A stretch of DNA of 40,329 bases from Macrostomum lignano (Eukaryota), in the NCBI GenBank assembly GCA_002269645.1, contig NIVC01002505.1:1-40329 (forward strand), read 5' to 3'. Each line of letters begins with the position of its first letter. The first letter of the stretch is position 1. Shown piece after piece: positions 5,039-40,329 of this stretch. The notes beneath the pieces are model-generated. The model worked only from the letters and a program-made list of their open reading frames with translations, ran no database searches and had not been told where the DNA came from. The position numbers and the translations under genes are program-made.

Positions 5039-5117
5039 ATGGCTGCTGGACAAGTGCCGCTTCTAGCTGCTCTTGTTTGCCTTGCAGCTCTGAGTGCCCC
5101 TGCGTTGGCTCATAGTG
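5039..5117 (+). CDS. Exon 1: signal peptide MAAGQVPLLAALVCLAALSAPALAHS
   Basis: ATG at 5039, hydrophobic core, A-L-A cleavage motif, donor GTGAGT at 5118; phase 1 matches the acceptor at 5872. Too short to appear in the ORF track. Confidence 0.85.
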
Positions 5118-8100: not shown

Positions 8101-11100
8101 GTGCCGCCCAAGGAGTGCGAGTGCCTGAACAAACTGTGCTTGGACAGAATGCCTCGGAAAAAGTGTCTGAAGTGGCGAGCTCGCGGCCGGTGCAAGAGGT
8201 ATCCGGAGGTGATGGCGCGATTCTGCCGGCTGACCTGCGGCCACTGCGAGACAAGATGCGGGGAGAATCAGTTTAGCGACAAATTGTGCAAAAATATTTT
8301 GCGGCAAGGGAAATGCAGCAAGCCGCTGTACAAGGCTGTCTGCGCGGCCACTTGCGGCCGCAATAAGTGTCGTGAGTTGCTTTTTTACGGCTCGTTCGTT
8401 TTGAAATTTTCTAATGATTTCTGGATTACGTTTAGGTGTAGAACGTGTCAGTTGGCGCCAAAATAAAGTAAGATAGCTCAAATTAAAAGTTAGTTGACGC
8501 CAAAAAGAGCGTTAAGATGGCGCCAAAATGGAGATTCAGTTAGCGCCAAAATAGAGTATCAGTTTGGGCGCCAAAATAGAGTGTCAGTTTAGGCGCCAAA
8601 ATAGAGTGTCAGTTTAGGCGCCAAAATAGAGGGTCAGTCTGGGCGCCAAAATAGAATGTCAGTTTAGGCGCCAAAATAGAGGGTCAGTCTGGGCGCCAAA
8701 ATAGAATGTCAGTTTAGGCGCCAAAATAGAATGTCATTTTGGGCGCCAAAATAGAATGTCAGTTTAGGCGCCAAAATAGAGGGTCAGTTTAGGCGCCAAA
8801 ATAGAGGGTCAGTCTGGGCGCCAAAATAGAATGTCAGTTTAGGCGCCAAAATAGAGGGTCAGTCTGGGCGCCAAAATAGAATGCCAGATAACGGAGTCAG
8901 TTAGCGCCAAAATAGAGAAGCTATCAACAATTGTTTTCTTCAATTTGTTCAAATCTTTAACATTTGAGTTGAAGCTTAAAGCCGCTCGCTAACTTTCTAT
9001 TCAGGCTGCCCAAACAAGCGCCGGATCGAGTCCAAGTGCTCCACGCGGTACAAAAATCGAATAATAAAATCGATTCGTTATCTGCCCGGTCCGCACGGCA
9101 AGTGCATCAAGAGCACTGTAGTCCGCTACGAACCGTGCGGGGGTGAGTTCGTGTTCTATGGACACCTTTTTTACATAGAAAAAAAAACTGAGGATTGCTG
9201 ATCGGGCTTTGTGAATGGCTGGTGAATGGGCTTTAGCACCAGGGGCTTTAGCACCAAGGGGCTTTAGCACCAAGGGGCTTTAGCACCAAGGGGCTTTAGC
9301 ACCAAGGGGCTTTAGCACCAAGGGGCTTTAGCACCAAGGGGCTTTAGCACCAAGGGGCTTTAGCACCAAGGGGCTTTAGCACCAAGGGGCTTTAGCACCA
9401 AGGGGCTTTAGCACCAAGGGGCTTTAGCACCAAGGGGCTTTAGCACCAAGGGGCTTTAGCACCAAGGGGCTTTAGCACCAAGGGGCTTTAGCACCAAGGG
9501 GCTTTAGCACCAAAGGGCGCCAGCACCAACGGGCGCCAGCACCAAGGGGCGCCAGCACCAAGGGGCGCCAGCACCAAGGGGCGCCAGCACCAAAGGGCGC
9601 CAGCACCAAGGTGATAAGTTACGTTTTAAGTAGCTGCAATCAACCCATTCATTTGCAGCCTGTCCCAGCATAGCCAAGACCAAGCTGCAGCCGTGCAATT
9701 ACTGCAAAGGCGTGCGAACAGGCAAGCGCACTATGCAATACCGAGAGACCCACGGTAAGCACCGCTGCCTGCGTCGAGTCACTCGAGTCAGCAAGAAGTG
9801 TCCCTGCCCTCCCTCTGGCCAGCTGAAGGTTGTCAGCAGCAGCAAATGCGTGAAACACACCGAACTGGTCCGCGTCACCAAGGTGTTCAAAGCCGCCGAG
9901 AAGTGCACCAAGTGCAAGCGAATAACCCGACGACAAGTTGTAAAGAAAATTAGTGAGCTTATAATTATAACAATTTTGTTTTTTTAAGCATTAGATTAAG
10001 GCAGGGGTTGTAGCCTAGTTGTCAGAGCGTCAGACTCGCGACTTGAAGGTCGGGGGTTCGATTCCCGATCGCACTGGAACAGTTTGTGTCCTTGAGCAAC
10101 TTAACTCTGCATTGCTTCAGTTCACCCAGCTGTAAAATGGGTGCCAGCATTAGCTGGGGTAATTGAGGGTGTGCGGTGACCCCGCCGTTAGCAACCTGCA
10201 GATGTGCCGCGCATTAGCTGCGGCTGAGCTGTCGGTTGCATATGCGGCCCAATTAGCGAGGTTACAGAGATTGTCTCTCTCAGAGAGTCACTCTCACCAT
10301 GTGTAATTTACCTTTTAATCTATCTACGCTTCTACCTTTTTAATCACAGAATGCTCGGGCAGACGAACCGTTCTCAAGAAGTGCACGTCGGGACGCAAGC
10401 ATCGCAAGAAGCTGGTGTACACTAAGCAAGCGAGAAACTGCAAATGCATCTGGAAGCTGGCCAAGGAGCAGAACCTGCTCTGCTACTGCAGCAAGAAGCG
10501 CAGCGTGAAGCGTAGTTGCTCGAACGGCTATCGGATTAAGAAAATAACTGGGTTGCGGCTCAAGAACAACAAATGCGTTCGTTGGGTGCGCCAAGTGAAA
10601 CGGAAGATTAACTGCCCCAAGAGACGCCAAGCAAAGCTGATTTGCCAACGAAAGACGTGCAAAGCGACCAAGATTTCCAGCTATTACCAGCTCAGTGGAT
10701 GCAAGTGCAGTAAAAAAGTTGTTAAGCGGCTGGTTGGAAAATGCTGTGAGTTTGGCAAAGATATTTCTATTCTGTCTTGCTTTGTCGACTCGACCTGTTT
10801 TTTTGCCAGACGTATGCCAAATTTAGCTCTACATTATACTTTCTACTCATCAGTAGACGAACTCTGACACAAAGTCTTCACTAAATAGAAAATGCGAAAC
10901 GAAACGAAGTCGAAGCTAGTCTGTATCCTTGGAAATCCTGTGCACCAGCCGCCCAGGCTCGATTCCATGTGCAGTCGCATTAATTTGGGGCTAAATTGGA
11001 ATCTCGGCTTGGCTCTGCTCGTGCAATTGAGGGCTTTGAGGGCCCACTCCCAAGGCACAGTGAAGTGTACATGCCTAACGATAAATAAAGTTATGGCCCC

Positions 11101-14100
11101 TGCGCATGACGGCGTACGTATCCGCGCGCTTGTGTGTGCCTGCTCAGGGGAGTCGGCAGAATTGGCAGTAATGCCTTTCACCGGTTGTGCAACAATGTCG
11201 CTCAAAGTTCTCCAGGCCTCCTGCCTCTTAAAAATCTTTAATTTTCAGTTTTTAGTAGTCGTTTTTGAAAACTGCTTGAATTTTTCTTAGAAACAAAGAA
11301 TTTTTCTTAGAAACATTGATTTTTTTTCTTAAAAACAACGAATTTTTCTTAGAAACATTGATTTTTTTCTTAGAAACAATGAATTTTTCTTAGAAACACT
11401 GATTTTTTCTTAAAAACAAAAAATTTTTTCACATTTTTAAAAGGTTGTCCGAAGGGCTACAAGAAAATTGTGCGAGTCGATCGCTACTGGAAGAAGCTGA
11501 TCAAGGTGCAATACCTGCTTGAAGATCACAAGTGTCGCAAGAAGACAACCACCAGAAAGTACCGGGTTGCTTGTCCACCAGCTAAAAAGGAGGCTCGATG
11601 CGACAAGGTCACCGGTGCCAAGGTGTTCAAGAAAATCTGGTACGTCCTCAAAAATGGCGACTGCGTCAAGAGGCGGTCGAAACGAGTGGCGAGACTGCGT
11701 GAGTTTCGATTTGCGCTTTTTGCTAGATTTTTGACACCTTTAAATCGCATTCCCTATCTATAAAGCTGGTGCCAGACAGTGGTAAAATACTCATTTAGTA
11801 AATATTTTAAATATTTTTGGATGGTTTCATAGATAATGATCCTGTCTAACAGGTGATGATCCTGTCTAACAGGTGATGACCCTGTCTAACAGGTGATGAT
11901 CCTGTCTAACAGGTGATGATTTTGTCTAACAGGTGATGATCCTGTCTAACAGGTGATGATCCTCTCTAACAGGTGATGACCCTGTCTAACAGGTGATGAT
12001 CCTGTCTAACAAGTGATGATCCTGTCTAACAGGTGATGATCCTGTCTAACAGATGATGACCCTGTCTAACAGGTGATGATCCTGTCTAACAGGTGATGAC
12101 CCTGTCTAAGAGGCTATGATCCTGTCTAACAGATGATGACCCTGTCTAACAGTCTATGATCCTTCTAACAGGTGATGAACTTGTCTAACAGGTAATCACC
12201 ATGTCTAACAGGCTATGATCATGTCTGATTGTCTGTATATCCCTGTCTGGAGCAAGTTATGTATTTTGTCTGTTTGTCTGTGCAATTTACAAGCTTTTCT
12301 GCAGACTAAACTGAATTAGAGTTCGAACTCACGCAGACTGCCTGCACGGTGTCTACCGACACGTCGGGCCCTGCCATCGCTCTGGCGGCAAAGGCGTCTC
12401 ACGCTATCGCAAAGTCCGCTACGAATATTATCGCCGAAAGAAGGGCAGCTGCAGCTGCGAGAAAGTCCGGCGCACCGTCAAAGAGTTGTGCGGCTGTCCG
12501 CAGGGTAACTTCGTCAAAACGACAAAATGTCCGAAGACTGGCTGCAATAGTAAGAAGTGCGGCTCCAAGTGCCACTATACTAAGACGTACTTTTACTTTA
12601 CGAAATGGTCGTATGATGGAGACAAACATCACAAGAGAAAGCACTGCCATGCTAAGGTACGTCATGAACTTTAATCTAGCCACCCGTGAAAGTTGTACCC
12701 GTCATATTTCATAAGCAATGGGAGCATCAAATGAAACTATTCCAGGTGTTTAAGCACATCCATTTCCCTTGCTGCTGCGCCAGCAACAAGCGCGTGAAGA
12801 CTTGGTGCCGTTCGCACAAGCACTCCGTCAAACAAGTCACCTACACCAAGCTCAGCAAGGACAAACACGAATGCGTCCGTTTGAGACGCACGACGACCTC
12901 CAGAATTCGATGCAAGCACAATAGCGAGGGGACCGCCATTAAGAAGCGTCTGCCGCATCCGAAGCCTGGATACTACTATATCGCCACCTATCGCTGGCAC
13001 GTGAAGAACTGTCGCTGTCTGTCAACCGTTGCCAAGCGAACCTGTCGCAAGCGATGCAATCCGACTAAAACGAGTCGACGCTGCAATCGCGTCACCGGAG
13101 AATGGATCACTAGGAAGGTGAGCTGGAAGCTGCGCGGCTGCCGGACCTGCGTTCAACGGGTGCGAGAGGCTCGAACTCCCGTGCATTGTCGACGGAAGAC
13201 AAAACGAACTAAACGGTGCGACAAAAAAACTGGTATTTTAACCGTCACGGTGACGCATTGGAAGCGCAAGGGATGCAAATGCGTGCAAAAGAAGCGAGTC
13301 ACACGAAGACGTTGCAGTGAGTGCAAAATTCCCTTTAAATATTCAACTGCAGCACCGGTAGTTGATTTTTCGGCTAATTTAAGCTAATCTTTTATTTCAG
13401 AATGCCCCAAGCCGATCGTTGGAAAACGCCACTGCGACCACGAGTCGAGCGCTTACGTCACTCGCACCACCTACTGGCTGTTGAAGTCTGGAAAGTGCGT
13501 CAAGCGACGCAGAGTCAAGGTCAGCCAAGTGACCTGCTCGCATAGCGTCAAACGAAAGAGCGTCTGCAAAGCAAAGTCGGGAGTGAAGTTGGTCTACATT
13601 GGAGTTTTGAAGCCTAAAGGATGCCGCTGTGTCAGGCAATGGTCTCTAGAGAATCGACTTCGGTGCAGTAAGTAGTCTGCACATTGTCATCATTATCTGA
13701 CCTCTACAGACGATATCATACAGAATGAAAGCAACTTTTTCCTCAGATTGCAACCGTGAGAACAACGAAGCCAAGCAGGACCGCAGAAAATATTGCGATA
13801 AACATCGCAACCTGAAAGTGACAGTAACCTATCGCTACGTGCTGAAGAAGGGTTCCTGCGTTCGCAAGCGTCAAAAGAGATATCGGGCGTACAGCTGTCC
13901 GCCATCGTTCACCGAGAAGAAAAAGTGCGACGTTAAACGACGCATTCAGGTGACGCTGACGCACTACTCGGTCAAGCGGAAGTGCTCCTGCGTGCGAGCA
14001 GTTAAGCGCCGATCGCGCAAATGCGGATGCGCTCACAAGGTGCGCCGGAAACGCTATTGTCGCAGAGCTGAGGGCGTAGTAGTGACCGAATTGCATACTG

Positions 14101-17100
14101 AAAGGTGGAGTCACAAGAAGGAGCGTTGCATCAAAAAGAAAACTACAAAGAGCCATCGAGTTTGTAAGTCGATTGTAGAACTGCTTTGTTGTTGCTAAAT
14201 ATGTTTTTAACAATCGAATAAATTACCTCCATTTACAGCATGCAGCCAGAAGACTCACTATAGCGTCACAAAGTGCATTAAGAATAAGCACTACGTTGAG
14301 ACAAAAGTCTACCAAGTTCGCAAGGGCTGCCGATGCATTAAGCGAAGAGTCAAGAAGAGACGAAACTGCCGTAAGTGAAACTTTTTGCGCATTTAAGCTT
14401 TATGTATTTTTAAGTTTATCGATAGTACGTACGATTTTTTCTATCTAATTAGCAAATGTTTTCATGAGAACATTATTATGCACCCTATTCAGACTGCAAG
14501 ACAATAACCCGCAAATACAAGTGCCCGAAGGCTGGCTTTACTCGACGAATTGTCACCCAGATTCGACGTTGGGACTCCGCTAAAAAGCGTTGTAAAACAG
14601 TTCGCTACGTAACTCGCCGCATTCGATGCCGCTGCCCAGCTGGTGGACGCAAACGCCTTTGTCGCGCTGGTTCCTGGGTTACTGAAACCATATCCTTTGC
14701 TCTGCGTCACGGCCGCTGTTACAAGCGCGTAAAAAGGCGCAAGCAGAGGGTGACGTGTCGACACAAGATCCGCCGTAGATACACAGCTTGTAAGAAAACT
14801 GGTTGCAAGAAACGCCACATCTACACGATGAAGCTGAAACTTGACAGCAAGCGTTGCTCGTGTTACTATGCGGTTGTCAAGCGAATCGCATGCCCCTGCT
14901 GCTGTCCAAAGACTGTGAAACATCCAAAGCGTTGCGTCAAGGACGGCAAAGCTTGGCAACAAGTGACTGTTGGCTATCGAGTTTTGAGCGGCAAAAAGTG
15001 CGGCTGCAAACGTTGGCTAAAGCGAAAGACACGCCCAGTCGCGTGCACCAAGCTTCGCCAGCTTGTTTGGCAGCCCTGCGACCGACACAAATGCATCAGC
15101 CATCAGCGCAAGGTTCACCACGTGGTTCACGGATGTCGGTGCCGCAAGATCAGCCGGCTCACAGGAAAGAAGCGCGTCTGCTGCTGTCGAGGCAAGACAA
15201 AGCGAAAGCGCTTCTGCCGTCGGAGCGCAATCTACGAGCGAGTGACGCTAGTGCGGCTTCGGAACTGGCGTTGTGTGCGTATCAAACAATTGCGATTACT
15301 AAGATCTTGGCACTGCAAGGCCAAACGGAAGACTGTAGTAGGAAAGTAAGTTAAATATCGATTCCGTAAAATTTATATTTGAGGGAATGCTTTTAAAGAT
15401 TTCTAGATTCATCGCATGCCCGATATTTTCAAAGTATTGTCTCATCAATTTTAACTTACAACATGATAAATATATAAAAACATCCCAGGTGCGATCGTAC
15501 TACCTGTAAACAGCCGCTGCACACTCTAGTGTACAAGGTTTCCCGACCTCATTGCCGCTGTCGGCGAGTAGCCATCAAGCGACGCCACCGCACCTGTTGC
15601 TGTCTACAGCGACCTAAGCGAACGAAACGCTGTGACTCTGCCACTGCGGCCTGGGTTCACACCCGAGTCTACTACGTATTCAATGCTTCGAAGCACGTTT
15701 GCGTACGTCGACGAAGCACAGTCCGAACGCCCGTTCGCTGTTCTAAGCATGTAAAGCAAAAGAAAGATGGATCGTGCAATCGGCACACCTGTCGTCGAGT
15801 TGTTAAGCAGATCGATCACTACGTTCATCATTGCCGGTGCCGGCGTCGGGTTAAGCGTGTCAGTAAAGTCTGCTGTTGTCCACGAGCAAAACGCCTGCCA
15901 GTGCGCTGCGACAGGTCCAAGCACCAGTGGCTTCGGAGTAAGATCACCTGGCATCTCAGTCATGGTCGTTGCGTTAAGCGAGTCACCACAAAGAGGCATC
16001 AACTGACCTGTCGACGCGATGTTAAAACTCGAGTACTAGCGTGTAGCCGTCGCACTTGCAAGCGTAAAATTGTAAAAATTTTACACAGACCCAAGGGCTG
16101 CCGCTGCGCTATTCGGCACAAAATCACCCACCGAACTTGCTGCTGCAGACCAGCTGTTAGGTCCAATGTCAAATGCGTGAATGATCGCGATGTTGTTAGA
16201 ATCACTAAGCGCCGAGTGTTTAACCGTCACACCTACAAGTGCAAAACTAAAGTTGTCAAAAAATTGCTGCACCGGCTGCACAAGTGTCGCAACACAATCT
16301 ACCGAAGCAAATGTAATAAAAAGACTCGGCACCGAACAGTTCGCAAGGTGCTACGGCGACCGAAAAAGTGTCGGTGCAAAGTTTACCGTCGAGTCACTCA
16401 TCGAGTGCTGTGCAGTAAGTTTCATTTCAAGCTTTTGTATGTTAAATAGTAGCTTGTGGCTTTTTTATATTATCCAATTTTCAAATCAAATTATCTACCG
16501 TCAGGTTGTCCAAACACTCGCGTTAAGCGAACCAAATGCAGCAAGACCAGCTGTCACAAGTCTATCGTGAAGACCTGGTACACCTCGTCTGGCCACGGAG
16601 CTCATTTCAAGTGCCGCAAGCATCGCCAGGTAATTAAAGTTCGCTGCTGTTGCAAGCGCAACCCGACCAGTCGAGTATATTGCGATCGGAGCAGCGGAGC
16701 GACAAAACGAGAGAGCAAATGGACTGTGTTTATCGCTTCTAGACGAGCCTGCGTGCGTCGCAGGAAAGTCGTGCTCGTTCGTCGACTTGGTAACCGAAAG
16801 CCTCTTAGTCTAATACTGCGATTGCATGTTCTATTTTAAATAGTAAAGATTGTTATTCATTCCCCTTTCCAGCTTGCAAAAGAGGCGGTTGCAAGTTGGG
16901 AAAATGCAACAAAAGCACCGGCTATCGGATCAAAGTTTGCGTTTCCTATAAGCCTCTAAGGCATAAGTGTAGTTGTAAAAAGCGCACTGTTAAACGAAAG
17001 ATCATCTGTCGTAAGTGTTGCTGAGAAATACGAGTATCTTTGTTTAATTTTAATTTAAAAAACAGTCATTCTATAAAACTCCCTGATCCGAATTTCTGCC

Positions 17101-20100
17101 AGACTGTCCAAAGAGTTACACAAAAAAGTTCTGCAAAGGTGACGAGCGGAAGCTTGAAGTCAGAACTAGCTGGAAAATTTCGCGACTCGAAAATCGTTGC
17201 GTCAAGCGCGTCAAAACTATTACTAACCATCTAGAATGTCCTAAGCGTCGTTGGCGCGAAAAGAAGTGTCCAACTAAGCCAGACTGTCAAGGAAAAATCA
17301 CCACTAATTGGTATCAGTTGAAAAAATGCCGCTGCAAACGAATTACCCGATCCAAACCCATCGTTTGCTGTTGTCCAAAGCCGACTAGAGTAAAGCGTTG
17401 CTTAGAAAACCAATGGGTAACTGTGCTGACTAAACACAATCTATTCAAGGGCCACTGCTTGCAGAAGGTCAAACGGATTCGAGTCAGTGTTCGATGCAAG
17501 CGAAAGCGAGTACGAATCGGTCGCTGCAGAAAGGATTGCAAAAAGCATCGAGTTATTCTGCTCTACGAAGTGAAGAATTGCAAATGCGCAATAGCAAAGC
17601 GAATCATTCGCACTAAAATGTGCTGCTGTCCTCGACCGAAGCACTACAAGCGCTGCAAGGCAGCCAAGGGAGTTGTCCAAAACATCAAACAGTTTTGGCG
17701 CCTCTCCCACGGAAAGTGTCTCAAGCGTAGGCGGATTGTCTCGCGCAAAATTGTCTGCCCGAAAGGTTCGACTCGAGCCAGCAAGTGCAACCGACACACC
17801 CGCAAACAGAAAGTTGTGATCGTGCGCTACAGTCGAGTAGCCTGTCGGTGCCATCGCCGCAAACGAATTCGTCAATTGCTGTGCATGTGTCGACCGCCGC
17901 GTACTGTGAAAGAGAAGTGCACTTCAGAGCGAATTAAGAGGCGGGTTTACCGGATCACCTATCATTTGTCGCATCCGCGCAGCAAACTAGTTAAGAGGCA
18001 TTGTCTAAAGCGTCGGAAAGTATGGTAAGAAGCTGTTCGGTCCTGAAGTTTGCAAGTTGCTAACTGAAATTTAATTATAATAGATTTTACGAGCGCACGT
18101 TTTAATTTCAGGTATACGGAACCTTGCCGCTGTCCGAAGCCTACTCGTCGACAGCGCTGTTCTCGCAAGGGCACAGTTCTGACAACCAAAATCCGCAAAT
18201 GGCGTCTTAAAATAGTTAAGAGATTGCATCATCGTAGATGGATTCGCAGGCGCACGTGCGTGCTGAAAATAACGAAGAAGCACACTAGAATCCGATGCAA
18301 ACGTCGAAGTGTTTCCTGGACTAAGTGTCGCAATTTTCGCCGAAAGAGGACCACAGTCAAACACTGGGTGCATCGGTGCAAATGTCGACGACGCGCTGTA
18401 GTTCGAGTGTTTGCTTGCAGTGAGTGAAAGTATTAATAAAAATATCTTCGGCCATTTGTATTTAGAAGCTGTTTGCAATCACTTTTAAAAACACTTACTT
18501 CGATACACTGACGCATCCAGATTGTGCGAAGAAATCTACCAAAAGTCGTCGCTGCGACGCTAAAGCCGGAGACCTGGTCTACACGCGCAAGTCCTGCTAC
18601 AGCAAGCGCGGCGCCGCCACGTGCAGCTGCACTACCCGACGCTGGCGCAAACACATCAACTGTCCGCGTCGCTACGTACGGCGTCGACTCACTAAGCGAC
18701 ACTGCGGGCTCAAGCGACACCGCGCTTGGTACAATCGGTTCTCAATCGAATGGACGAAACGCCGCGGTTGCGGTTGCGTGCGCAAACGACGCACAGTGCT
18801 GCGCTTCTGCCATTGCCAGCGAGGTTCCAAACGCGCCGGGTGCGCCATTAACGGCAAGACATGGGTAAAAACGAAGGTGACTTATCGCCCCAGCGGCTCC
18901 AAGCATGGCGGCTGTAAGAAAGTGAAACGAGTCACCAAGCGGCGCATTTTGTGCCGCCGACATGCCGGCAAGCCAAAAGTTAAAATCGGTGGCTGCAGCA
19001 AGCACTGCAAGCGTTCTGTGTCCGTGCGCCAGTGCTACGTGAAAAACTGTCGCCGAAAACTGTACATCCAAAGTCGTTTGCAGTTGTGCTGCAAGCCGAA
19101 ACCAAAGCGGCATCGCTATTGTGAGAAAAAATCTGGGAAGTGGGTCACAAAGACATTGCACTACAAGTGAGTTAAATGCCTCCGTCTATGTACTTTTATT
19201 AGGACCATTTTGTTATTCACTCCTACGTTTATGGATAATATGAAACAAACGCTTTCCCTAATGTTGTTTCTCAGACTTGTTCCATCTGGTCCACTGCTGA
19301 AAGACCGACATGGTCGAGTCCTAGCTAAGCAGCTGAAGGTGGTAGCCACAACTAAACGTCACTATCGAAAAGTACGCTGCCCTCGAAATAAAACTCGCGA
19401 AAATTGTCACCGACGTTCCGGCCGCTGGGAGAAAACCCAAATTACTTGGCGTCGCGTTGGCTGTCATTGCAAACGTCGAATCGTTCGTAAAAGGGGTCGA
19501 TGCAGTGAGTTCTTCTCTGAAAAAATCGTTAATTCGAATCACTTTTCTTAATTAAAATGCAAGCATTAAACTTAAATATTATTACTAAACCAAAACAGAG
19601 TGCCCACCAAAGCGAGTCCGCTGGGGTCGGTGCCATAACAGACACAAGGTTCGCACCGTCATCAAATTTTTCCTGAGGAGTCAAAAATGTCACCGCGAAG
19701 TCAAGAAGCGACTATTCCTGTGTGCTTGCCCCAAGCCTCGACGTTACACCGTGTGCGACGGCAAAGGTGCCTGGAAGAAGTGTCATGTGACGTATCGTCT
19801 TAAATTCCGTCAACAGCGCTGCATCAAAAAGCGACACTGCCGAAGTCGCCTACAAACGTGCGAGGCGTCGTCTGAAACTCGTAGCAAGTGCAAGCATTGC
19901 CACCGAATAATTCGCACAGTCTCGTGGCGCTTGAACCGACGTAAGTGCTCGTGCACTCGAATAACTCGCAAGCGAAAGGTCGAATGCGATTGTTGGAAGC
20001 GGAATAGTCGGAAGACTGTTTGCAAGCACGGAGCGTTCGTCACGAGCATTGTCAAGTATCATCAAAAAGGCGAGAAGTGTGCCAAGGTTGTCCGAAAGAT

Positions 20101-23100
20101 TACAAGAGCTGTCCGTAAGTTTAACCTTTTTTCGGTAAAAAGCTACTCATATTAGCGATGCAAATTACTCCTAAATATAATGTATTTATCGTGCAACACT
20201 CAATCAGGCTGCAGTCGTCGCCACATCAAGCGAATTTTGAAGGGCACCTGTGTGAAAAAGGCTGGTCATAAGCGCCGCGGCTACCAGAAGCTGTTACGGC
20301 TGTGGCACGAGCGTCGTGGTTGCAAATGCTACCGAAAACGAGTCTATTCCTGGGTGCCATGCGTCTGTCACCTGATTAAGAAATACCGAACAAAACGATC
20401 GGTTTATTGCAGCCGGGGTCACGTGACTGTTCACAAGAAAGTTTATTACGTTCTAAAGAGGAAGAGCCACAGATGTGTAAAGCGTGTCCACAAACGAAGG
20501 ACTCCAGTTGGTGAGATTTATGTTTAAGCTTATTTACTGGTTTTAAGCTAATCTGTAGGCAGCACAAAGCAAATCGAAATTCAGGATAGTTGGTTAGGTA
20601 TCTATTTAGGTCTACAATCAGTGAATTTAGGTTAGTTATAGTTGTACTGATGCAATGTCTACTGATGCAATAACTTCCAGTATGCAAGGGCACCAGGACC
20701 CGACGCAGTCGTTGCAAGCCAAACGGCAAAGGCGACAAGTTTTCTGTCACACGAGTTCTGCGTCAGCGCAGCGATGGCAAATGCGGCTGTGCTTGGCGTT
20801 CGGAGAGCACGCGTAAAAATGTTTGCCACTGCCGTCCACCTCGCCGAATTAAGCGCTGCGTGCAGAATAAGACGCGTCAACAAATCCTTATCCGCTACCA
20901 CCCAGTTCGCGGACGCAGTCACTGCAAAGGAAAGCGCCGTGTTTACAACAAGCATCTGTCCTGCCCGAGCAACTTCTCCCGACGAGACAAGTGTCATCGA
21001 TGTACCTTTTCAGTTAGAAAATACGCTTATCATCCGGAAAAGTGTCGCTGCGTAGCACGAAAGGTTGCCACAAAGCGACTCCGCTGCTGCTGTCCAAATC
21101 CTGTCACAAAGCGTCACTGCGATGCCAAACGACATATGATTGTCACCGTCAGGAGCATCTACAAGCTGCGACACCATCGCTGTCATCGCCGACGCGTCAC
21201 GCGCACTCGCCGAGTTCGTTGTGGACGAACGCGACCCCTATACCGCGTGTCTAAGTGCAGCAAGGACGGTTTCCGTAAAATTCGCAAAATGTGGCGTTAC
21301 ACGGTCGGTTGCTTGTGTCGCAAGCGCACGGTTGTCCGCAAGCAACGTTGCTCATGCCCGCACGCTCGCGTCTACAAGCCCGGAAAGTGTGGTCGCCGCT
21401 TTGCTCACGACGTCTGGCTAGGTTACAAACTAAAAGACACTGGCGTGAAAATTCCCGGCACCAACAAACCAGTGTTAAAGTGCGTAAAAGTGGTTGTCGA
21501 TAAACGAAAGCGCCGTTGCCGCTGTCCAAAGCCATACCGTCGGTCGATCTGTCGTAGAGATAACCTCATTCTCCGGATAACCGTTTCTTATCGCCTGCAC
21601 GCTAATAGCTGTCAGCGAAAGCGAGTTGTTCGTAAGCGACGCTTGTCCTGTCGTCGTCGTCCCCACCTTGTTCGTCGGATAGTATCGCCAGAAAAGTGTT
21701 CAGCAAAGCATGGCTATTCCCAGAAACTAACATACATTTACGTGCATGCAAAGGGCTGCCATTGTAGAAAGACCCGACGAGTGAAGCATATAATCTGCGA
21801 CTGTTTCCGCAAGTACGGTGGCAAAAAACATCACGTTAAATGCGTTAAGCACAACCGGCTGTTTAGGCGCAGCTTTTGGATGGCAAAGCGCGGTAAAGGC
21901 TGCGTAAAGCGAGTCAAAACTGTCGCCAAGACAATCCGTTGTGCCAAGAAGGTACGCATTCGTTCCGGTCCGTGTAAGCGCTCGAGCGGGAAGAAATCTT
22001 TCCGTATCTATCATCTGGTTGCCCGTCACTGTCGCTGCGTTTGGCAGCTGGTGCGCCGCGCAAAAGCTGCTTGCCGATGTCCGCCATCGAAGCGCTCCAC
22101 GCGTTGTCACAAGAATGCTAGCTGGGTGACAACCAAGTTCAAGTGGCGTCTAGTTGGAAGCGGGCCAAAAGCTCGCTGTGTCCTGCACAAGCGGAAAATA
22201 GTGCGCCATATCAAGTGTCGGGTTGGTCGACGAGTTCGTCGCTCAAGCCGCTGCAATAACTCAGGCTACAAAGTCACCGAAGCCACTACTCGAAGACTAG
22301 TTAAATGCAAGTGCATGAAGCGCACTGAACGTCAAAAGTGCAGGTGCCGATGCCCAAAGAATCGTAAAGCGCGCGTATGTCGCGGCAGTGTGTGGGTGAC
22401 GGAGCGCATTACTCACAAGCTGGCCAAGTGCGCTTGCAGAACAACGCGTCAAGTGATTAGAGAGCCGGTTTCCTGTCCGAAGAAAACTCGAGTACAAGGC
22501 CCCTGTCGGCGTGGCAAAAACGGAGATTTCTACAAAAAAGTTGTGCGAACAAGTTGGAGGATTAGTGGGTAAGCTTTGCATTCACGGACTTTGTATTTTC
22601 ATTGACACTATGCGATGTACAAATACAAACTAGGCCTTTATAGAAAATTTGTGATCCATTTTTAAACAAATGACGTTCATTGATGATTTTCATTTTTAGC
22701 TGCAAATGCAAACGCATCCGCAAAATCCGACACCGCCTCTGCGGCTGCGACGCCCAACAACTTAAGCGTCGCATTTGCGAATCTGGATTTGTTCGCGTCA
22801 CAGTCGTCTGGAAGCGACTGTTAGTTAACAATGCATGCCGCCGAGTGCGAAAGTATCGGCGAAAAGAACGCCTTCACTGCGGCCGGGTTCAAGTGCGTCG
22901 AGTGTGCGACAGACGGAGCGGCAAATTGAGCGTGTTTGTTATTAGGCCCTACGCCAAGAGTTGCCGTTGTCATAAGCGTGTGGTTCGGCGCCTACGACGA
23001 TGCGGTGAGCCGATGCTCAAATTATAGATAAATGGCACTTTCCCAATAAGAGCTCATTAGCAGTGCTTCGTCTTAGCTAGTTGTAGCCTACTAGTTGGAG

Positions 23101-26100
23101 CGTCGGGCTCACGACTTTGAGGTCGGGGGTTCGATTCTCGACCCATTAGGAACAATTTGTGTCCTTGAGCAAGACACCTAACTCTGCATTGCGTCAGTTC
23201 ACTTTTAGCTGTAAAATGGGTGCCAGCATTAGCTGGGGTAATTGAGGATGGGTGTGGTGACCTCCCCCCAGTCCTTGGACTGAACAGCTGTACGCTGCCT
23301 TCAGATGCGCCGCGTAATAGCTTCGGCTGAGCTGTCGGTTGCACATCTGCCCATTAGTGTAGGTGTAGTAAATTATTATTCATATTATTAGTGTTATGAT
23401 ATCAAGTAAATCAATGCGTCTTTAATAATTTTAGGCTGCCACCAGCGCCGCAAGATGAAGGTTGGAAAGTGCAACCGTCATACGTGCCGGCAGCGGCTGC
23501 TGTACTTGCGTCGAGTATTCAACAAGGCGTCCGAAGAGTGCGTATGGCGACGTTATCAAAAGCAGCGGACCTGCTGCTGTAAGGGAGTGAAACGCCTGGA
23601 AAAGTGCAAGCACAAAGAGGGCCAACGAGTAGTCAAGGTTCTTAAACGTGTGCTCAGACATTGGAGCTGCGTCACTGTGGCGACAGAAGTCCGTCATCAA
23701 ATCAGTAAGTGAAATTAAAGCTTTGCTTGACATAACTAGTAAATTTATCTACAATTTCGCAACTTTTCGTTCCAGAATGCAAGCGTCATTTGACTGTACT
23801 GAAAAAGCGTCAGAAGAACGGAGTCCTCAAGCTGGTCAAGTGTTGGACGGTGCGCAAAGGTTGCGGTTGTGGCAAAAGATGTAAAACAATTTTCCGACGC
23901 TACCGTAAGTACTGAATGTTTCGTTGTTTCCCTTTATATTCTAAAGATAGAAAGATTTGGCTCTACTGTGTCAAAGTACCAATCATACCCACCCGACAGG
24001 CTGCAAGCGTCCATTGAAACGCAAGAGATGCATCTGTGTCAATGGCAAGTGTCGCACCCAGCTTATGTTAAAGCATTGGCGTCTGACCCACGGCGGATGC
24101 TACGGCCAGATCCGGGTCCGCACTCGGCCCACCGTTTGTCCGCCAGTGCTATTCAGTCAAAGCAGATGCGCCGTGCCTACAAAGTACGGCTTCTACCGCG
24201 TTAAGCGCACTGTTCACTGGCGCCAGAAGCGCTGCCGTTGTGTGCGCATCATCAAACGTCAATCTGTCGTGTGTCGCTGCTGGCGATCAAGCTCGAAAAA
24301 GCACTGTCATCGACGACGCGGATTGATTGAACACATCCGAGTTCACTATCGAATCAACAAGGGCCGTTGCGTGAAAGCGATCAAGCGAACGCAGCATCGG
24401 GTGAAGTGCGGTCATAAAACCTGGCGCTATTCGCGACGAGTTGCCCACCCGAAGCGCAAGGATGTACACTTGAAGATCTACGTAAAACACGTCCGAATTG
24501 GTTGCAATTGTAAGAAACAAATTAAGCGAGTGCCCTGCAGATCAAGGTTAGCTGCTACCTTTATTTCGAGGTCTGGGCTTCCATTAAAATATTATTAATT
24601 TTTTGTTTCTAATCTACTATTTACTCACCCCAGGTGCCGACCATGCATCAAAAAGCGTCGCTGCAGCTCCGCTGGTAGAGTACTCGTCAGTTCAAGAATT
24701 TGCTGGCACCTTTCTAATTGTCGATGCATCCGTCGTGTGGTCGTCAAACGACACCGTGTACGCTGTCCGCGTTCTCGACGTCGGACAATCTGTCACCGTA
24801 GCAAAAAGTGTGCCATTGCAATAGCCACTAAGCAATACCGTGTTCAAGGTTGCCGATGCGTAGCAAAAAACAAAGTGCATCGAACTGGCCGAAAGTGCTG
24901 CTGTCCTGGGCCAAAGAAAATTCGCAAATGCGTCCGCGGTTCCATACGCCATCGAACTGTGCGCTACCAGTTGCGCGATGGTCGATGCCACGCTATCGTT
25001 TCCAATGCCTTCCGACCAGTACAATGTCCCAAAAAGCGTCGCCACGTTGTTCGCGGACGCTGCCGTAACGGTCGACAGGCCTACGTCCAGCACTTTTGGA
25101 CTAAGCGTGGCTGTCGATGCGTTCGAGTGAAACGCTCCTATCACCGCCGATGCGGTTGTCGGTACAAGATAGTCGAGCTGGTTGTCGCTGTGGATCTTCA
25201 TTCTTCGGTGAAGGAAGGCAGTCCAAACTATCGATCGCACGTCTCCGATTTTCTTGAAGTAGTCCTGCGCCAATTCGAATCCGGCTCAGCGAAGGTTCGC
25301 ACGGTGTTGTTCACATACAGCTCAACTGTGCGCAAGCATCATATCGAGTCCAGCGAGAATGATGCTTCTGCATTGTTCAACGATTTCACCAACAGTAAGA
25401 CAAATCTTTTCGGCGCTCTGAAAGCTATTAAGGCTCACCTGGTTCGCAGCAGGCGTCAATATTCGAATAAAGTCAAGCGAATCGTGCTCGTAGTGACCAG
25501 AGGAAGACATACAAAGAGCAGGCGCTCGATTTTACTCGCGGATAAGATCAAACACATGGCTCGATTGTTCGTCATCGGATTCGGTTCGCTGCCTAAATCG
25601 GGTCGCTATGTTAAATGGTTGGCTAGCAGGCCAAGACGGGTGCATTATCTGAGGATGAAGAAGACACAAAAGTAAGTCTAGGCAATAACTCCTGACTATC
25701 CGGACATATAAGTAGTATAAACGCATATAAATTTCAAAAGTACCAAGCACAAAACATCTTGGTACTTAGTATTGTTCTTAATAAGACAAAAAGCATTCAG
25801 AGGCTGGTTAAGGTCAGGTAAAGTTCCTGGACCAAGTTCCAGTGCTCGTAGTAGTAACGAACGATTAATTATTTACGATCCGCGCAGTCAGTAGTAAGTA
25901 TAGTTAAGTAGCCAATAGTAAGCACCATTGATTTTTCAGATACAAGTTCATCGCTTCGCGAATCTTTGAGCACGCCTGTCGCAAGCATTGTCGACGACGG
26001 CCTAAACGTCATATTGGCAAGTGCAAGCGCGACACGTGCCGTCGTCTGCTTACCGAAGTCACGTGGCATCGCGACAAGCGCAGCGGAAAGTGCGTCCGAC

Positions 26101-29100
26101 GCCGCCGGACAAAATCTCGCACCTGCTGCTGTAGAGGTCAAAATTCGAATCGCCTGGTGTGCAGAAACGGTCGCCGACTTCGAATCATTGTCCGATACAA
26201 GTTCGACGGGCGTCGAGGCGTCTGTCATAGGCGAGTTCATAAAATCGACACCTCAGCCTCGCTACACGCTCGCTGCCGTCCAGTCAAACTGCGACGTCGC
26301 GGCTCTTGCGATGCTAAAGGCTGGCGTCGCGACGTTTTGGTACATCGCTACGTCACTAAGAAATCTTGTCGATGCCACACAAAACGGCGCCACCTACGCG
26401 CTGTTCGCTGCCGTTGTCCATCGACTAAACGTCAGCAAAAATGTCGACGCAATCGACGCGGTCATTGGTACCGCGTTACCTGCCGTATTGAGTACAAACT
26501 GCATCGTCGCGGTTGCAAAAAGCGGAGACATTGTTCAAAGCGTCGAGTCGTTTGTCGACACAAGAAAAGAGTTGTCCGGGTTCGAGGCCGGTGCCATCGA
26601 CATAGCTGCCGTCGCCGAAACAGTGTAGTCACATACAGCGTTCATAAATGTCGCTGCAGGAAAAGAGTCAAGACTTTAACTCAAGTCTGCTGTAAGTATT
26701 CGTAAGAGTATTTGCATGCGTGCTTAGAATACAAAAATGCGTCTTGCTCGTTGAAAACCAGCCACGTATGCAAAAAGCAGGCGCGGCGCATCCAAAGGCT
26801 GTGTACAGCTAGGTGCCCATAACTTCCGTCCAGAATTTTCACCACAGCTCAGGGCCATCTATCATATCAGAGTTAGGTAAAGTGAAGCTCAACTTCATTT
26901 TTTGTCTTTTCTTACTGTGGCTATTTTGAGGGGTGACACTATACGACGTAGCCTATTAGGTTGCGCACTAACCGCGAAAAACTCTGCTTAACTTGCCTCT
27001 CTAGCAGTGAATTTACTAGCCTACTAAGCTAGGGACCTTCTGGCCTACTAGAGCGCTATTATGGCATTACAAAAGTCGCTCTATTAAAACATTTTCGGAA
27101 CATTTTCAACAGGCTGCAAGCGAAAAAGTCGTAAGCACAGTTTCTGCAACAAGCGCCGACACGCTATAGTTCGAGTTAAAACGCACTACCGCCTGGTTCA
27201 CGGCGCTTGTCGCCCTGTCTCGCGCAAGACGGAGCACCCCATCCGATGTCGCACCGATCGTCGTAAGCTACCGGGCCACTGCCGACGCCACAAAAACGGC
27301 TTTTATCGACGCGTAGTCACGCAGACCTGGCATCGACGTGGCTGTCGTTGCATTCGACGAACACGTAAAAGTGGTTTGCGCCTTTGCCGATGCTCGTCGA
27401 AGAGACGCAAAGTTCAGCGCTGTCTGTCGCGACGTGGAGTGATAGTTACAATCGAGAGTTGGCTGCATCCGCGCGGCAACAGCTGTAAACTGCGCAGTCG
27501 CACCGTCGGCCGAGAGCGAGTCACCTGCAGCCATCGTCGCGTTCGAGTTAAGGGTCGCTGCGGTCGCGGCAAAGCGGCAAAGGCGGCCGCTGCTGCAGCG
27601 AAGGACGGTCGGAAATTCGCTATTGAAACTGTCACGTGGCAGCGCAGGGCTGGCTGCAAGTGCAGGCAAGTTGAAGCGTTTTTGATCTTGATTTGTTTAT
27701 CTTGTCTTTTATCTTTCTGTTTTATCTTTATCGTCTTTTTGCAGACGGATCCGCCGCTCCCACGTCCGCCTCTGTGCATGTACAAAACGCGTTCGTCGAG
27801 TGACACGTTGCCATGCCAACCGCCAACTTTCGGTTACGCTTTATCATCACCGTCTGGCGCATTCTCGCAATGGATCTGCGACATGCAAAATCGTACGAAA
27901 AACTCGCCGCCACCGAGTCCGCTGCCGTCGACCAGTGATCCGCATGGGACGAAAATGTCACTCAGGCAAACGAACTGTCATCGTTAAAGTCTTCACGCCG
28001 AAGAAATGTCGCTGCAAAGCAAAACTTTACCGACGTTTGATAGCCTGCAAAGCCGCCTGCACTGACAAGCTTCCTAGCAAGGTGTGCAAGAAGTGGGCCG
28101 CATCTCGTAAAATTAAGATTTGCCGTCGACACCCCCACTTGGCTGATCGGCTGTGCGCTGCAACATGTGGAAAATGTAAGCTTAGGATAGTGGAACTGTC
28201 TTCGATTTTCCATTTTTATAACTAAGTTATGACTCTATTTAATTTACCATCAAACAGGCTGCAGCAAATCGACAATCGTCCACGTAGGAGAGCACTGTCT
28301 GCTGGCTCAAAATCGTACACTGCTTGCCAGTCAAAATGATACGAGTAGCAACCATAAACTTACCCTTGCAAAGCTGACCACGTTTGAGGCCTGCAGCCGT
28401 TCCTGCTTGGCTAATCCTCACTGCCGAGCCTTTGACTATAAACGCAGCAGCGGCCACTGTCGCCTGCTCCGCATCAACCACCACAGCCTCGACCGCGACC
28501 TTCCGGAACTCAAGCCCACCCCGGGCTGCCTGCTGTTCGAAAAAGCTTGTCAACGAAAGCCAAAAGGCTGCCCGCATCGACGCATTCAGAAGTCTTGGGC
28601 CTGCGTTTGTCGTCGATTCTTTGGCAAGGATCGACGTCCGCTGTGTTATCGACGCGCTCTCATCGCTGTTTACTTCCGACGCAGCCGCCGCCGCTGTGTC
28701 CACAAACTTCGCCGAATTTTAATTCCTTGCCACGATTGCGAGGACAAGAAGCGCTGGTGCCAACAAGCCGCTCGTAAGGGCAAGTGCGCCAAGGATTCCC
28801 GCGTGAGAAAACTTTGTCCGCACAGCTGTCACAAGTGCGCCCGACATCGCACTCGGGCAGGACGCGCAGGTCATGGTCATCGGCTAATGCGCCGTCGCAT
28901 TAGTGCTTGCTCCAAATCTGGCTGGCGTAAGATCGTTCGAGGTGGACTGTACTACGACAGGCGACTGAAGCTGTGGCGAGTTTATAAGGGAGTGAGTCAC
29001 AAACGCTGCATTCGCTGCCCAATCGGTTCCAGACTGATTGTTGGACGCTGCACCAAGCACGGCAAACGGAAGCTGACCTGGATTGTGGTTACTAGACACA

Positions 29101-31909: not shown

Positions 31910-32530
31910 ATGTCTCCAACCGCAACCTTGGCGTCCGCAACTTGGCCAGTCTGTTTGGCACTCGTCACCTCGGCTATCAGCGCGGGCGTACTGGTGGCAG
32001 CGGCTCTCTACTGCTGCCTCCGGGACACAAGTCGGTTCACCTGCTGCGGCGCTGAGTTTTACTTTGCCTCCGAACTGTCGTCCTGGAGCGACTACGATGA
32101 ACCCGGATGTACATGTAGCAGCGGAATCGGTGACGCCGCTACCACATCCGTCAGCCACTATTCAACGCACTGTCGATATCAGCGTCAGGCTGCACTGTTG
32201 TCCTCACCGACAATGTTTCAGCAGCAGGGCGACAGCGGCAGCCTCAGGCTTCAACCGATGACCTCATCGACTGTGATTAGTAACCACAGCAACGCGAGCT
32301 CCCTACCTGTAACGCCTCGAACCGTGGATGAAACTCGAGTGCTGTTAGTACCCACGGTAGTCGAGCTAGACGACGACGAAGAATGCGACGAGTTTGTTGA
32401 TGGCGACAACGGAGCTCTGCAAACAGCTACTGCGTCGTCTCGGTTTGCTGCTCTGATCAATAGCGGATCTAGTGGGTCAGCTGGACAGCGAATGGGAGCT
32501 GAAGCGCCTTGTAGACGAGACTATGTGTAG
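31910..32530 (+). CDS. Probable single-exon orphan single-pass membrane protein, 206 aa
   Basis: gccATG start with an upstream in-frame TGA at 31877; hydrophobic VCLALVTSAISAGVLVAAALY followed by CC; Ser/Thr-rich and acidic tail; GC-rich against AT-rich flanks. No recognisable domain. Confidence 0.55.
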   Translation: MSPTATLASATWPVCLALVTSAISAGVLVAAALYCCLRDTSRFTCCGAEFYFASELSSWSDYDEPGCTCSSGIGDAATTSVSHYSTHCRYQRQAALLSSPTMFQQQGDSGSLRLQPMTSSTVISNHSNASSLPVTPRTVDETRVLLVPTVVELDDDEECDEFVDGDNGALQTATASSRFAALINSGSSGSAGQRMGAEAPCRRDYV

Positions 32531-32629
32531 CGATGTACGTTGAATAGTTGAAGAACGTTTTGCTGACCAAGAATTGCGTAACCTGCTTTGAAATTTACTT
32601 ACAGTACGCGTACTTTGATAGCAGCCTAT

Positions 32630-39180: not shown

Positions 39181-40329
<1,149 letters not shown>

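What the first reader, a model, noticed from the sequence alone, without database searches (positions are those of the whole stretch)
9005..28040. Unrecognised ~45-aa disulfide module repeated dozens of times in two alternating flavours
Seen: type A (CPKP-x5-C-x6-W-x6-Y-x-L-x2-G-x-C-x11-C) alternates with type B (C-x3-TC-x8-Y-x4-C-x-C-x9-CCC), with alternating hydrophobic/basic residues typical of beta-strands. The copies have diverged so far that no DNA-level repeat is visible, so the expansion is old. Inference: a disulfide-pinned beta-hairpin resembling a TSP1 repeat without its Trp strand, stacked into a long cationic rod. It may be a domain family with no profile yet.
Basis: partly seen in the sequence, partly recalled or inferred. 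Interest (0 to 1): 0.7.

Follow-up and report, generated by a model that had tools for sequence, protein, structure and literature searches.

The report
Unannotated flatworm disulfide β-hairpin repeat
The region encodes most of a giant secreted flatworm protein made of about 100 copies of a 44-residue, disulfide-stapled β-hairpin module that no domain or structure library recognises, here in an extremely positively charged form that probably binds negatively charged material outside the cell.

Summary
Window 9005-28048 (+) is the repeat part of one spliced gene (about 34 exons, 5039-29664). My 30-exon model from 9005 reads 5,049 codons without a stop (R 18%, K 14%, C 9.5%, about +29 net charge per 100 residues).

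It holds about 96 tiled ~44-aa modules in two alternating flavours. These are one homologous module and form an 88-aa, 8-Cys super-repeat. Coding copies share no DNA similarity, and non-Cys identity averages 16%.

Neither Pfam nor PDB sequences match. AlphaFold2 is confident (pLDDT 92-97): each module is a short strand plus a 12-residue β-hairpin. Foldseek finds no related fold, so the TSP1 resemblance is not supported.

A profile of the super-repeat finds 86 proteins among 1.84 billion. Every named one is a flatworm protein labelled only "VWFA/ShKT domain-containing" or "hypothetical". The closest is Macrostomum lignano PAA59660.

Domain order: signal peptide, VWD-C8-TIL, two ShK, 84 modules, VWA, 12 modules, ShK-like, PAN, ShK-like, four variant modules, ShK-like.

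Cys covariation across 593 units supports disulfides C1-C3 and C5-C8 and an optional fifth.

The function is inferred: a mucin/VWF-like multimerising, polyanion-binding extracellular scaffold. It is a new domain family of an ordinary kind of architecture.

The parts
5039..5117 (+). Probable exon 1: start codon and signal peptide (MAAGQVPLLAALVCLAALSAPALA|HS), with a GTGAGT donor in phase 1
   Evidence: Sequence read. It joins in phase to the acceptor at 5872/5873. It corresponds to the signal peptide of M. lignano PAA59660. No signal-peptide predictor was available.
5873..6147 (+). Exon with the N-terminal part of a VWD domain
   Evidence: tblastn with P0017 aa 39-128, 49% identity. Splice sites read.
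6839..7327 (+). Exon with the VWD C-terminal part and the C8 domain. The reading frame changes near 7140-7150.
   Evidence: Pfam VWD E 9e-4 on a fragment. Pfam C8 E 3.8e-5, above the curated cut-off. tblastn to P0017. Frame change seen.
7937..8371 (+). Exon with a TIL domain and two ShK domains
   Evidence: Pfam TIL 2.7e-10 and ShK 3.3e-8. 58% identity to P0017 aa 302-444.
9005..25159 (+). Module array 1: 84 tiled ~44-aa Cys modules (aa 1-3860 of my model) in 25 exons. Most introns are phase 1 and sit in the codon before a boundary Cys.
   Evidence: Gene model. HMM tiling. Alignment A1.
25160..25979 (+). VWA domain, split by the intron 25672-25939
   Evidence: Pfam PF00092 E 3.1e-9. Coordinates.
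25980..28048 (+). Module array 2: 12 modules (aa 4045-4567). Includes the GC-AG intron 27666-27744.
28049..28259 (+). ShK-like domain, below the Pfam cut-off (its last codon spans the intron 28176-28257)
   Evidence: Pfam ShK E 0.031, 15.3 bits against a cut-off of 20.9. It has the six-Cys pattern.
28260..28547 (+). PAN/apple domain
   Evidence: Pfam PAN_1 E 7.6e-5, above the cut-off.
28737..28838 (+). ShK-like domain, below the Pfam cut-off
   Evidence: Pfam ShK E 0.0043, 18.0 bits.
28908..29468 (+). About four variant modules whose boundaries are C-x2-C instead of C-x-C
   Evidence: Only weak hits of the module HMM, none significant. The same pattern is present in the Echinococcus relative. 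No Pfam hit.
29558..29664 (+). Last exon: C-terminal ShK-like domain and the TAG stop
   Evidence: Pfam ShK E 7e-4, 20.5 bits, just under the cut-off. Splice site and stop read.

Best explanation
The region is the repeat body of one gene (about 5039-29664, + strand). The gene encodes a secreted protein of roughly 5,470 residues and belongs to a flatworm-restricted family.

Shown:
- The body consists of about 96 copies of one ~44-residue module that no library describes. Each copy is a short β-strand followed by a long β-hairpin.
- The modules come in two alternating flavours, which together make an 88-residue unit with eight Cys.
- Covariation supports the disulfides C1-C3 (the boundary Cys to the first residues of the hairpin's second strand in flavour A) and C5-C8 (an intramodule link in flavour B, from the segment before the hairpin to just after its second strand). 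It also supports an optional fifth bond between the C-x3-C Cys and the middle Cys of CCC.
- C2, C4, C6 and C7 are left for the A/B junction. C4-C7 with C2-C6 is weakly favoured. If correct, neighbouring modules are covalently interlocked.

Inferred:
- The N-terminal VWD-C8-TIL unit probably drives disulfide-linked multimerisation in the secretory pathway, as in gel-forming mucins and von Willebrand factor.
- VWA, PAN and the ShK-like domains probably give protein or glycan contacts.
- In this species the array carries about +29 net charge per 100 residues, roughly +1,450 in all. Hydrophobic residues on alternate strand positions and K/R elsewhere suggest a partly cationic surface.
- The protein therefore most likely acts as a very long polycationic extracellular scaffold. 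It would bind and cross-link polyanions such as sulfated glycans, mucus, glycocalyx or negatively charged surfaces, in a cohesive, glue or matrix role.
For: Gene and repeat:
- Uninterrupted 5,049-codon spliced ORF with consensus splice sites.
- 21 of 29 introns are phase 1 and lie at module boundaries.
- HMM tiling and cross-hits between flavours; significant alternation.

Fold:
- AF2 pLDDT 92.4 and 97.0, all-β.

No known relative:
- Pfam, PDB sequences, Foldseek against PDB and BFVD.

Family:
- 86 hits at E<=1e-3 among 1.84 billion representatives, 20 of them at E<=1e-30.
- All named members among the 30 clusters looked up are Platyhelminthes.
- The Echinococcus protein has the same order: modules, VWA, modules, ShK, PAN, ShK, modules, ShK.

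Disulfides:
- Columns 59-87: phi 0.91, p 3e-81. C5-C8 co-loss: p 9e-11. C4-C7: p 9e-5.
- 18 of 22 units lacking C3 also lack C1 in the alignment, and their preceding boundary reads CC-x-P.

N-terminal domains:
- Pfam C8, TIL and ShK; orthology to M. lignano PAA59660, which has SP-VWD-C8-TIL-ShK-ShK before its modules.
- Signal peptide read.

Charge.

Precedent for a polycationic cohesive protein in the same group of animals: Mlig-ap1, whose function is blocked by heparin (PMC6410801).
Against: - There is no expression or localisation data for any family member. I found the M. lignano gene identifiers in no paper or supplement.
- The family also occurs in parasitic flatworms, where the protein is near-neutral and carries many N-glycosylation sequons. 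Polyanion binding therefore cannot be the family's ancestral role.
- Multimerisation is argued only from domain composition.
- A frame change near 7140-7150 in the N-terminal exon leaves open that this copy is damaged or misassembled.
The C2/C4/C6/C7 pairing rests on very few events.
- pTM 0.52 means the rod shape is not established.
Confidence: 0.6

Rival explanations
1. The protein is a component of the flatworm temporary-adhesion (duo-gland) secretion: a cohesive polycation like Mlig-ap1, released by a polyanionic de-adhesive.
For: It has the same extreme K/R content and a VWD-C8-TIL unit, as in Mlig-ap1, and its closest relatives are in Macrostomum. One M. lignano cluster of module-containing proteins includes entries named SUEL-type lectin or VWFD domain-containing; lectin domains occur in known marine adhesives such as Sfp1.
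Against: Published adhesive proteins of M. lignano, Minona and Theama have different architectures: Cys-free KR/GRK low-complexity repeats, C-type lectin and EGF arrays. None has VWA, PAN, ShK or this module. Only two adhesive-gland proteins were reported in M. lignano. Relatives exist in parasites, which to my knowledge lack duo-gland organs.
Confidence: 0.15
2. The protein is a conserved structural matrix, basement-membrane or tegument-associated protein of all flatworms. The high charge in this lineage would be a secondary compositional shift without a specific polyanion-binding role.
For: The same architecture and a similar array length occur in cestodes, trematodes, monogeneans and macrostomids. 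VWA and PAN are, to my knowledge, common matrix-protein domains. Charge varies widely between relatives.
Against: Charge of about +29 per 100 aa sustained over 5,000 residues, and shared with the M. lignano orthologue (+22.6 per 100 aa), is unlikely to have no effect on binding. The VWD-C8-TIL plus ShK N-terminus was seen here only in the macrostomid members; the Echinococcus protein starts directly with modules.
Confidence: 0.2
3. The module is a highly diverged thrombospondin type 1 repeat or a midkine/pleiotrophin-like domain.
For: It is a small, basic, three-stranded disulfide-bonded β unit, as TSR-like heparin-binding domains are (general knowledge; DSSP strings).
Against: No TSP_1 or PTN_MK Pfam hit at E<=10. 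No Trp ladder or CSxTCG motif. Foldseek against PDB found no TSR match of any weight. Cys number and spacing differ.
Confidence: 0.05
4. The repeats are not a functional gene: a decaying pseudogene, or a compositional artefact of K/R/C-rich sequence.
For: There is a frame change near 7140-7150 in the N-terminal exon. The word-indexed protein search found no hit.
Against: 15 kb of coding sequence in 30 exons has no stop, although many K/R codons are one substitution from a stop. Seven Cys columns are invariant in alignment A1 and Cys frequencies across the family are 95-100%. Homologues reach E 1e-158. AF2 confidence is high.
Confidence: 0.03

Closest known systems
Uncharacterised flatworm proteins of the same family, e.g. 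Macrostomum lignano PAA59660/PAA60779 (closest), PAA50356, PAA86075; Echinococcus granulosus W6UV63 (annotated 'Collagen alpha-3(VI) chain')
   Same: Same module and same domain order. 41% identity over the first 1,117 residues to PAA59660. Collinear 22-26% identity over 2,800-4,700 alignment columns to the others.
   Different: None has been characterised, and their names come only from the VWA or ShK domains. The parasite members are near-neutral and carry many N-glycosylation sequons.
Gel-forming mucins, von Willebrand factor and SCO-spondin (VWD-C8-TIL proteins with long arrays of small disulfide-rich modules)
   Same: Giant secreted protein with an N-terminal VWD-C8-TIL unit and a long tandem array of small Cys modules encoded by phase-1 exons.
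   Different: It has one VWD assembly rather than three or four. No CTCK domain was found in this gene. The array is neither a PTS mucin domain nor TSR/LDLa modules, but a module with no detectable relative.
Mlig-ap1, the cohesive protein of the M. lignano adhesive (PMC6410801)
   Same: Flatworm origin, more than 5,000 aa, extreme K/R content, and a VWD-C8-TIL unit. Its function is blocked by polyanions.
   Different: The Mlig-ap1 KR regions are low-complexity peptide repeats. Its core has a C-type lectin and 17 EGF modules and lacks VWA, PAN and ShK.
Fibronectin type I module
   Same: About 45 residues, β-hairpin based, with a C...C-x-C...C spacing like flavour B. Its 1-3/2-4 connectivity is the one inferred for isolated four-Cys modules of this family.
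   Different: No Pfam fn1 hit and no Foldseek match. Covariation pairs C5 with C8, not with the C-x-C Cys.
Thrombospondin type 1 repeat and midkine/pleiotrophin domains
   Same: Small three-stranded, disulfide-bonded β units, often basic and glycosaminoglycan-binding.
   Different: No Trp/Arg ladder, a different Cys pattern, and no sequence or structure match.

Membership tests
Thrombospondin type 1 repeat (Pfam TSP_1) | Matches the family profile | tested here: not met
   No TSP_1 hit at E<=1 on seven repeat exons or at E<=10 on 26 repeat segments.
Thrombospondin type 1 repeat (Pfam TSP_1) | WxxWxxW Trp ladder and CSxTCG motif; six Cys per ~55-60 residues | tested here: not met
   The consensus from 42 units has at most one partly conserved W (29%) and no such motifs. 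There are four Cys per 44 residues.
Thrombospondin type 1 repeat (Pfam TSP_1) | Fold superposes on solved TSR structures | tested here: not met
   Foldseek against PDB: best E 0.2-0.25, TM<=0.38. The only TSR-containing entry (7b26) is rank 36 with probability 0.12. Foldseek is weak on very small domains.
Fibronectin type I | Profile match, and 1-3/2-4 disulfides within C...C-x-C...C | tested here: not met
   No Pfam hit and no Foldseek hit. Covariation pairs C5 with C8.
Midkine/pleiotrophin domains | Profile match to PTN_MK_N or PTN_MK_C | tested here: not met
   No hit at E<=10.
VWD-C8-TIL multimerising secreted proteins (mucin/VWF type) | A VWD domain followed by C8 and TIL near the N-terminus of a secreted protein | tested here: met
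   VWD E 9e-4 on a fragment here and 3e-13 in the orthologue. C8 3.8e-5 and TIL 2.7e-10, both above cut-off. Signal peptide read.
VWD-C8-TIL multimerising secreted proteins (mucin/VWF type) | Disulfide-linked multimer formation; C-terminal CTCK dimerisation knot | not testable with these tools
   No CTCK domain was found in this gene; its C-terminus is ShK-like. One short M. lignano cluster member is named 'CTCK domain-containing'. Multimerisation needs biochemistry.
The flatworm module family defined here (profile A1) | Tandem 88-residue units with Cys at profile positions 1, 10, 31, 44, 54, 73, 75, 86 and 88 | tested here: met
   42 full-length units in this protein and 593 in the family, with Cys frequencies of 0.95-1.00 at the internal positions.
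The flatworm module family defined here (profile A1) | Architecture: modules, VWA, modules, ShK, PAN, ShK, modules, ShK | tested here: met
   for the window. The Echinococcus protein read has the same order.
Flatworm adhesive protein Mlig-ap1 | KR-rich low-complexity flanks around a core of C-type lectin, VWD-C8-TIL and 17 EGF modules | tested here: not met
   Pfam finds no lectin or EGF here. The cationic part is a structured Cys module, not low complexity.

The most novel reading that the evidence does not exclude
The module is a new small-protein fold and a new domain family confined to Platyhelminthes. Its alternating flavours are covalently interlocked across module boundaries (C4-C7 and C2-C6), which turns about 100 hairpins into one continuous disulfide-laddered ribbon. 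In macrostomid flatworms this ribbon has become a polycation of about +1,450 charges that multimerises through VWD-C8-TIL. That would be a new type of polyanion-condensing or cohesive biopolymer, separate from the known flatworm glue proteins.
Probability: 0.3. Interest if true: 0.7.

Novelty: new variant of a known kind. Interest (0 to 1): 0.55.

Why it matters
- It defines a domain family that annotation misses. In flatworm genomes, including those of medically important parasites, these 1,000-5,000-residue proteins are labelled only by a minor VWA or ShK domain, or mislabelled as 'collagen alpha-3(VI)'. A profile built from alignment A1 would annotate about 75-85% of their length.
- The module is predicted with very high confidence yet matches no solved structure, which makes it a worthwhile target for structure determination.
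- The paired Cys gains and losses give a testable disulfide map.
- The hyper-cationic macrostomid version is a candidate new component of flatworm mucus or adhesive chemistry, a field that looks for polycation/polyanion switching mechanisms. It can be tested directly by RNAi and in situ hybridisation in M. lignano.
- The neutral, glycosylated parasite version may be an abundant flatworm-specific extracellular antigen.

Tried and rejected
1. The search for homologous proteins with the largest exon and with profile A1 found nothing. The exhaustive HMMER search then found the family, so the earlier result reflects the word pre-filter and is not evidence of absence.
2. Profile A1 against PDB sequences gave only a chance hit at E 0.42 to a K+ channel fragment.
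3. Foldseek with both models against PDB, and with the AB model against BFVD, gave only long-hairpin look-alikes such as GFP strands at E>=0.09.
4. Pfam at E<=10 on 26 segments showed no consistent family.
5. I tested positional one-to-one orthology of individual units with the Echinococcus and M. lignano proteins by best-match order. Spearman rho was 0.00-0.31, so the units are too diverged to tell. I rely on equal array length and one conserved landmark module instead.
6. I looked for expression data on the M. lignano paralogues by gene identifier in full texts and in two sets of supplements, and found none.
7. Identity with Mlig-ap1, Mlig-ap2 or the Tmed-ap proteins is rejected because the architectures differ.
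8. Separating the two possible pairings of C2/C4/C6/C7 by co-loss yielded only three co-loss events, of which one is clean, so this stays open.
9. A short intron to explain the frame change at about 7145 is rejected, because the skipped segment aligns to the orthologue.

Full report
**1. What is there**

The + strand between 9005 and 29664 carries stop-free stretches that are rich in Cys, Lys and Arg, in changing frames. Each stretch is bounded by a pyrimidine-rich AG acceptor and a GTAAGT/GTGAGT-type donor.

Joining 30 such exons gives one 5,049-codon reading frame that ends at TAG 29662-29664. All acceptors are AG. Twenty-eight of the 29 donors are GT and one is GC, with the AG|GCAAGT consensus, at 27666.

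Twenty-one of the 29 introns are phase 1 and lie in the codon just before a module-boundary Cys. This is the classic signature of shuffled extracellular modules. The window is therefore eukaryotic and the finding lies inside a single gene.

The composition is R 18%, K 13.8%, C 9.5%, H 5% and D+E 3.1%, which gives about +28.7 net charge per 100 residues.

**2. The repeat**

HMMs seeded from hand-cut 'A' and 'B' copies each recover the other flavour. There is therefore one ~44-residue module with two flavours.

A unified HMM tiles aa 1-3860 with 84 copies at 95% coverage, and aa 4045-4567 with 12 more. Most neighbours share the boundary Cys. Seventy-five of these copies are individually significant.

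Flavours alternate at 63 of 95 junctions, against 46 +/- 4.7 after shuffling.

The natural unit is an 88-residue AB super-repeat: C1-P-x7-C2-x20-C3-x12-C4-x9-C5-x18-C6-x-C7-x10-C8-x-[C1']. Twenty-one such units align with seven invariant Cys columns and about 30% identity (alignment A1).

Coding copies share no DNA similarity. All self-matches in the region are intronic. Non-Cys identity between units averages 16%, with a maximum of 31%.

**3. The rest of the gene**

Downstream of and inside the array lie:
- a VWA domain (Pfam 3e-9) and a PAN domain (7.6e-5);
- three ShK-like domains just under the Pfam cut-off;
- about four variant modules with C-x2-C boundaries.

Upstream, guided by the M. 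lignano orthologue, lie:
- a signal-peptide exon beginning at ATG 5039;
- VWD, C8 (3.8e-5), TIL (2.7e-10) and two ShK domains (3.3e-8).

The whole protein is thus about 5,470 residues: SP, VWD-C8-TIL, ShK x2, 84 modules, VWA, 12 modules, ShK-like, PAN, ShK-like, ~4 variant modules, ShK-like.

One irregularity remains. Near 7140-7150 the frame changes with no room for an intron, and both sides align to the orthologue. This is either an assembly indel or a real frameshift. The 15 kb of intact ORF downstream argue for the former.

**4. Relatives**

Pfam finds nothing on the repeats, and a profile search of PDB sequences finds nothing. The word-indexed protein search also failed.

An exhaustive HMMER search with profile A1 over 1.84 billion representatives found 86 proteins at E<=1e-3. 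Twenty of them score E<=1e-30, with up to 48 matched stretches each.

I looked up 30 clusters. Every member that carries an organism name is a flatworm protein. The taxa are:
- Macrostomum lignano, with several paralogues;
- the cestodes Echinococcus granulosus and Sparganum proliferum;
- the trematodes Echinostoma, Paragonimus, Dicrocoelium and Trichobilharzia;
- the monogeneans Cichlidogyrus and Protopolystoma.

Their names are 'hypothetical', 'VWFA/ShKT domain-containing' or, wrongly, 'Collagen alpha-3(VI) chain'.

The closest relative is M. lignano PAA59660/PAA60779, with 41% identity over aa 1-1117. The window is therefore probably from a macrostomid relative.

The 5,275-residue Echinococcus protein has the same domain order and a pre-VWA array of about the same length. 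It carries only about +3.6 charge per 100 aa and 71 N-glycosylation sequons.

The array is therefore ancient, and the extreme charge is specific to one lineage.

**5. Structure**

AlphaFold2, run on alignments of the protein's own repeats, gives pLDDT 92.4 for ABAB (173 aa) and 97.0 for AB (88 aa). Every module is a short strand followed by a 12+12-residue hairpin. pTM is 0.52 for four modules, so the packing between modules, and hence the 'rod', is not settled.

Foldseek finds no match below E 0.2 in PDB or 0.09 in BFVD. The top hits are GFP barrel strands. Foldseek is weak on such small domains, so this absence of a match does not prove a new fold.

**6. Disulfides from covariation**

I analysed 593 full-length AB units from the family.

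This indicates an optional fifth bond.
- C5 and C8 are lost together (p 9e-11).
- Eighteen of 22 units lacking C3 also lack C1 in the alignment. In the cases listed, the preceding boundary reads CC-x-P instead of C-x-C-P.
- C4 and C7 show weak co-loss (p 9e-5; three events, one clean).
- C2 is never lost, and C6 is missing only where an A-type module occupies the B position.

Relatives with isolated four-Cys modules separated by linkers (P0041) imply the basic pattern boundary-Cys to hairpin-Cys plus C2-C4.

In the linker-less AB tandem the single boundary Cys, C4, seems to serve module B. That would leave C2 to pair with the extra C6, giving a covalent interlock. This last step is tentative.

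**7. Function**

Nothing is known experimentally about any member. I found no mention of the M. lignano genes in the literature held here. The published flatworm adhesive proteins have different architectures.

From the anatomy I infer a secreted protein that multimerises through its VWD-C8-TIL unit. Its very long, disulfide-braced β array is a polycation in this lineage. The most economical mechanism is electrostatic binding and cross-linking of polyanions such as sulfated glycans, mucus, glycocalyx or charged substrates. This is analogous to, but independent of, the heparin-sensitive cohesive protein Mlig-ap1 (PMC6410801).

The rivals are a specific duo-gland adhesive role, a general matrix protein with incidental charge, a diverged TSR, and a pseudogene. 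The first two cannot be excluded without expression data. The last two are disfavoured.

**8. Verdict**

The TSP1 analogy is dropped.

The module is a real, ancient, flatworm-restricted domain family without a profile or a structural relative in the libraries available. It sits inside an otherwise conventional mucin/VWF-like modular architecture.

I rate the novelty as a new variant of a known kind and the interest as moderate to high (0.55).

Noticed in passing
window 7140-7150: Inside the VWD/C8 exon the reading frame shifts from frame 1 to frame 0 with no room for an intron. Both sides align to the M. lignano orthologue. This is either an assembly indel or a real frameshift in the N-terminal region of an otherwise intact 5,000-codon gene.
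   Followed up: partly
window 27666-27744: This is the only non-GT intron of the gene: a GC-AG intron whose donor is the textbook AG|GCAAGT.
   Followed up: partly
window 19090-19380 (model aa 2264-2324): A landmark module lacks C1 and C3 and carries a long insertion in the hairpin. The preceding boundary reads CC-x-P. The same odd module recurs in trematode, cestode and M. lignano relatives, so it is an ancient positional marker within the array.
   Followed up: partly
window 1582-4444: A 22-bp G-rich satellite (AGATAGAGGTTAGACTAGGGTG, about 131 copies) gives a GC skew of up to 0.8. It lies just upstream of the gene.
   Followed up: no
window 5212-5784, 6183-6658, 7442-7846, 8519-8887, 9228-9611, 11836-12226: The six long introns from intron 1 to the intron ahead of the 12337 exon each hold a different tandem-repeat array, with periods of 16-46 bp (some also scored at 83-111 bp) and up to 24 copies. 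The short (~80-100 nt) introns of the rest of the gene hold none.
   Followed up: no
window 10007-10256 and 23080-23357: A dispersed repeat of about 270 bp (76% identity) sits in two different introns. It may be a mobile-element fragment.
   Followed up: no
window 36344-36658 and 38788-39132, minus strand: These are two exons of a neighbouring TRAF-type gene with a MATH domain (Pfam TRAF-mep_MATH 5.5e-21). It converges on the giant gene.
   Followed up: partly
window 31910-32530 (+) and 32628-33739: A 206-aa ORF with an N-terminal hydrophobic segment has no Pfam hit. It is followed directly by a 33-bp tandem array of 34 copies, which produces spurious repeat ORFs on both strands.
   Followed up: no
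window 39181-40329: A (TTAG)n microsatellite of about 286 copies runs to the end of the window.
   Followed up: no
related proteins P0098/P0099 (M. lignano Mlig022069): In these gene models a VWD domain and an ShK-like match (below the Pfam cut-off) lie about 1,300-1,700 residues in, after a long upstream stretch. This may mean that two tandemly arranged paralogous genes were fused by the annotation.
   Followed up: no
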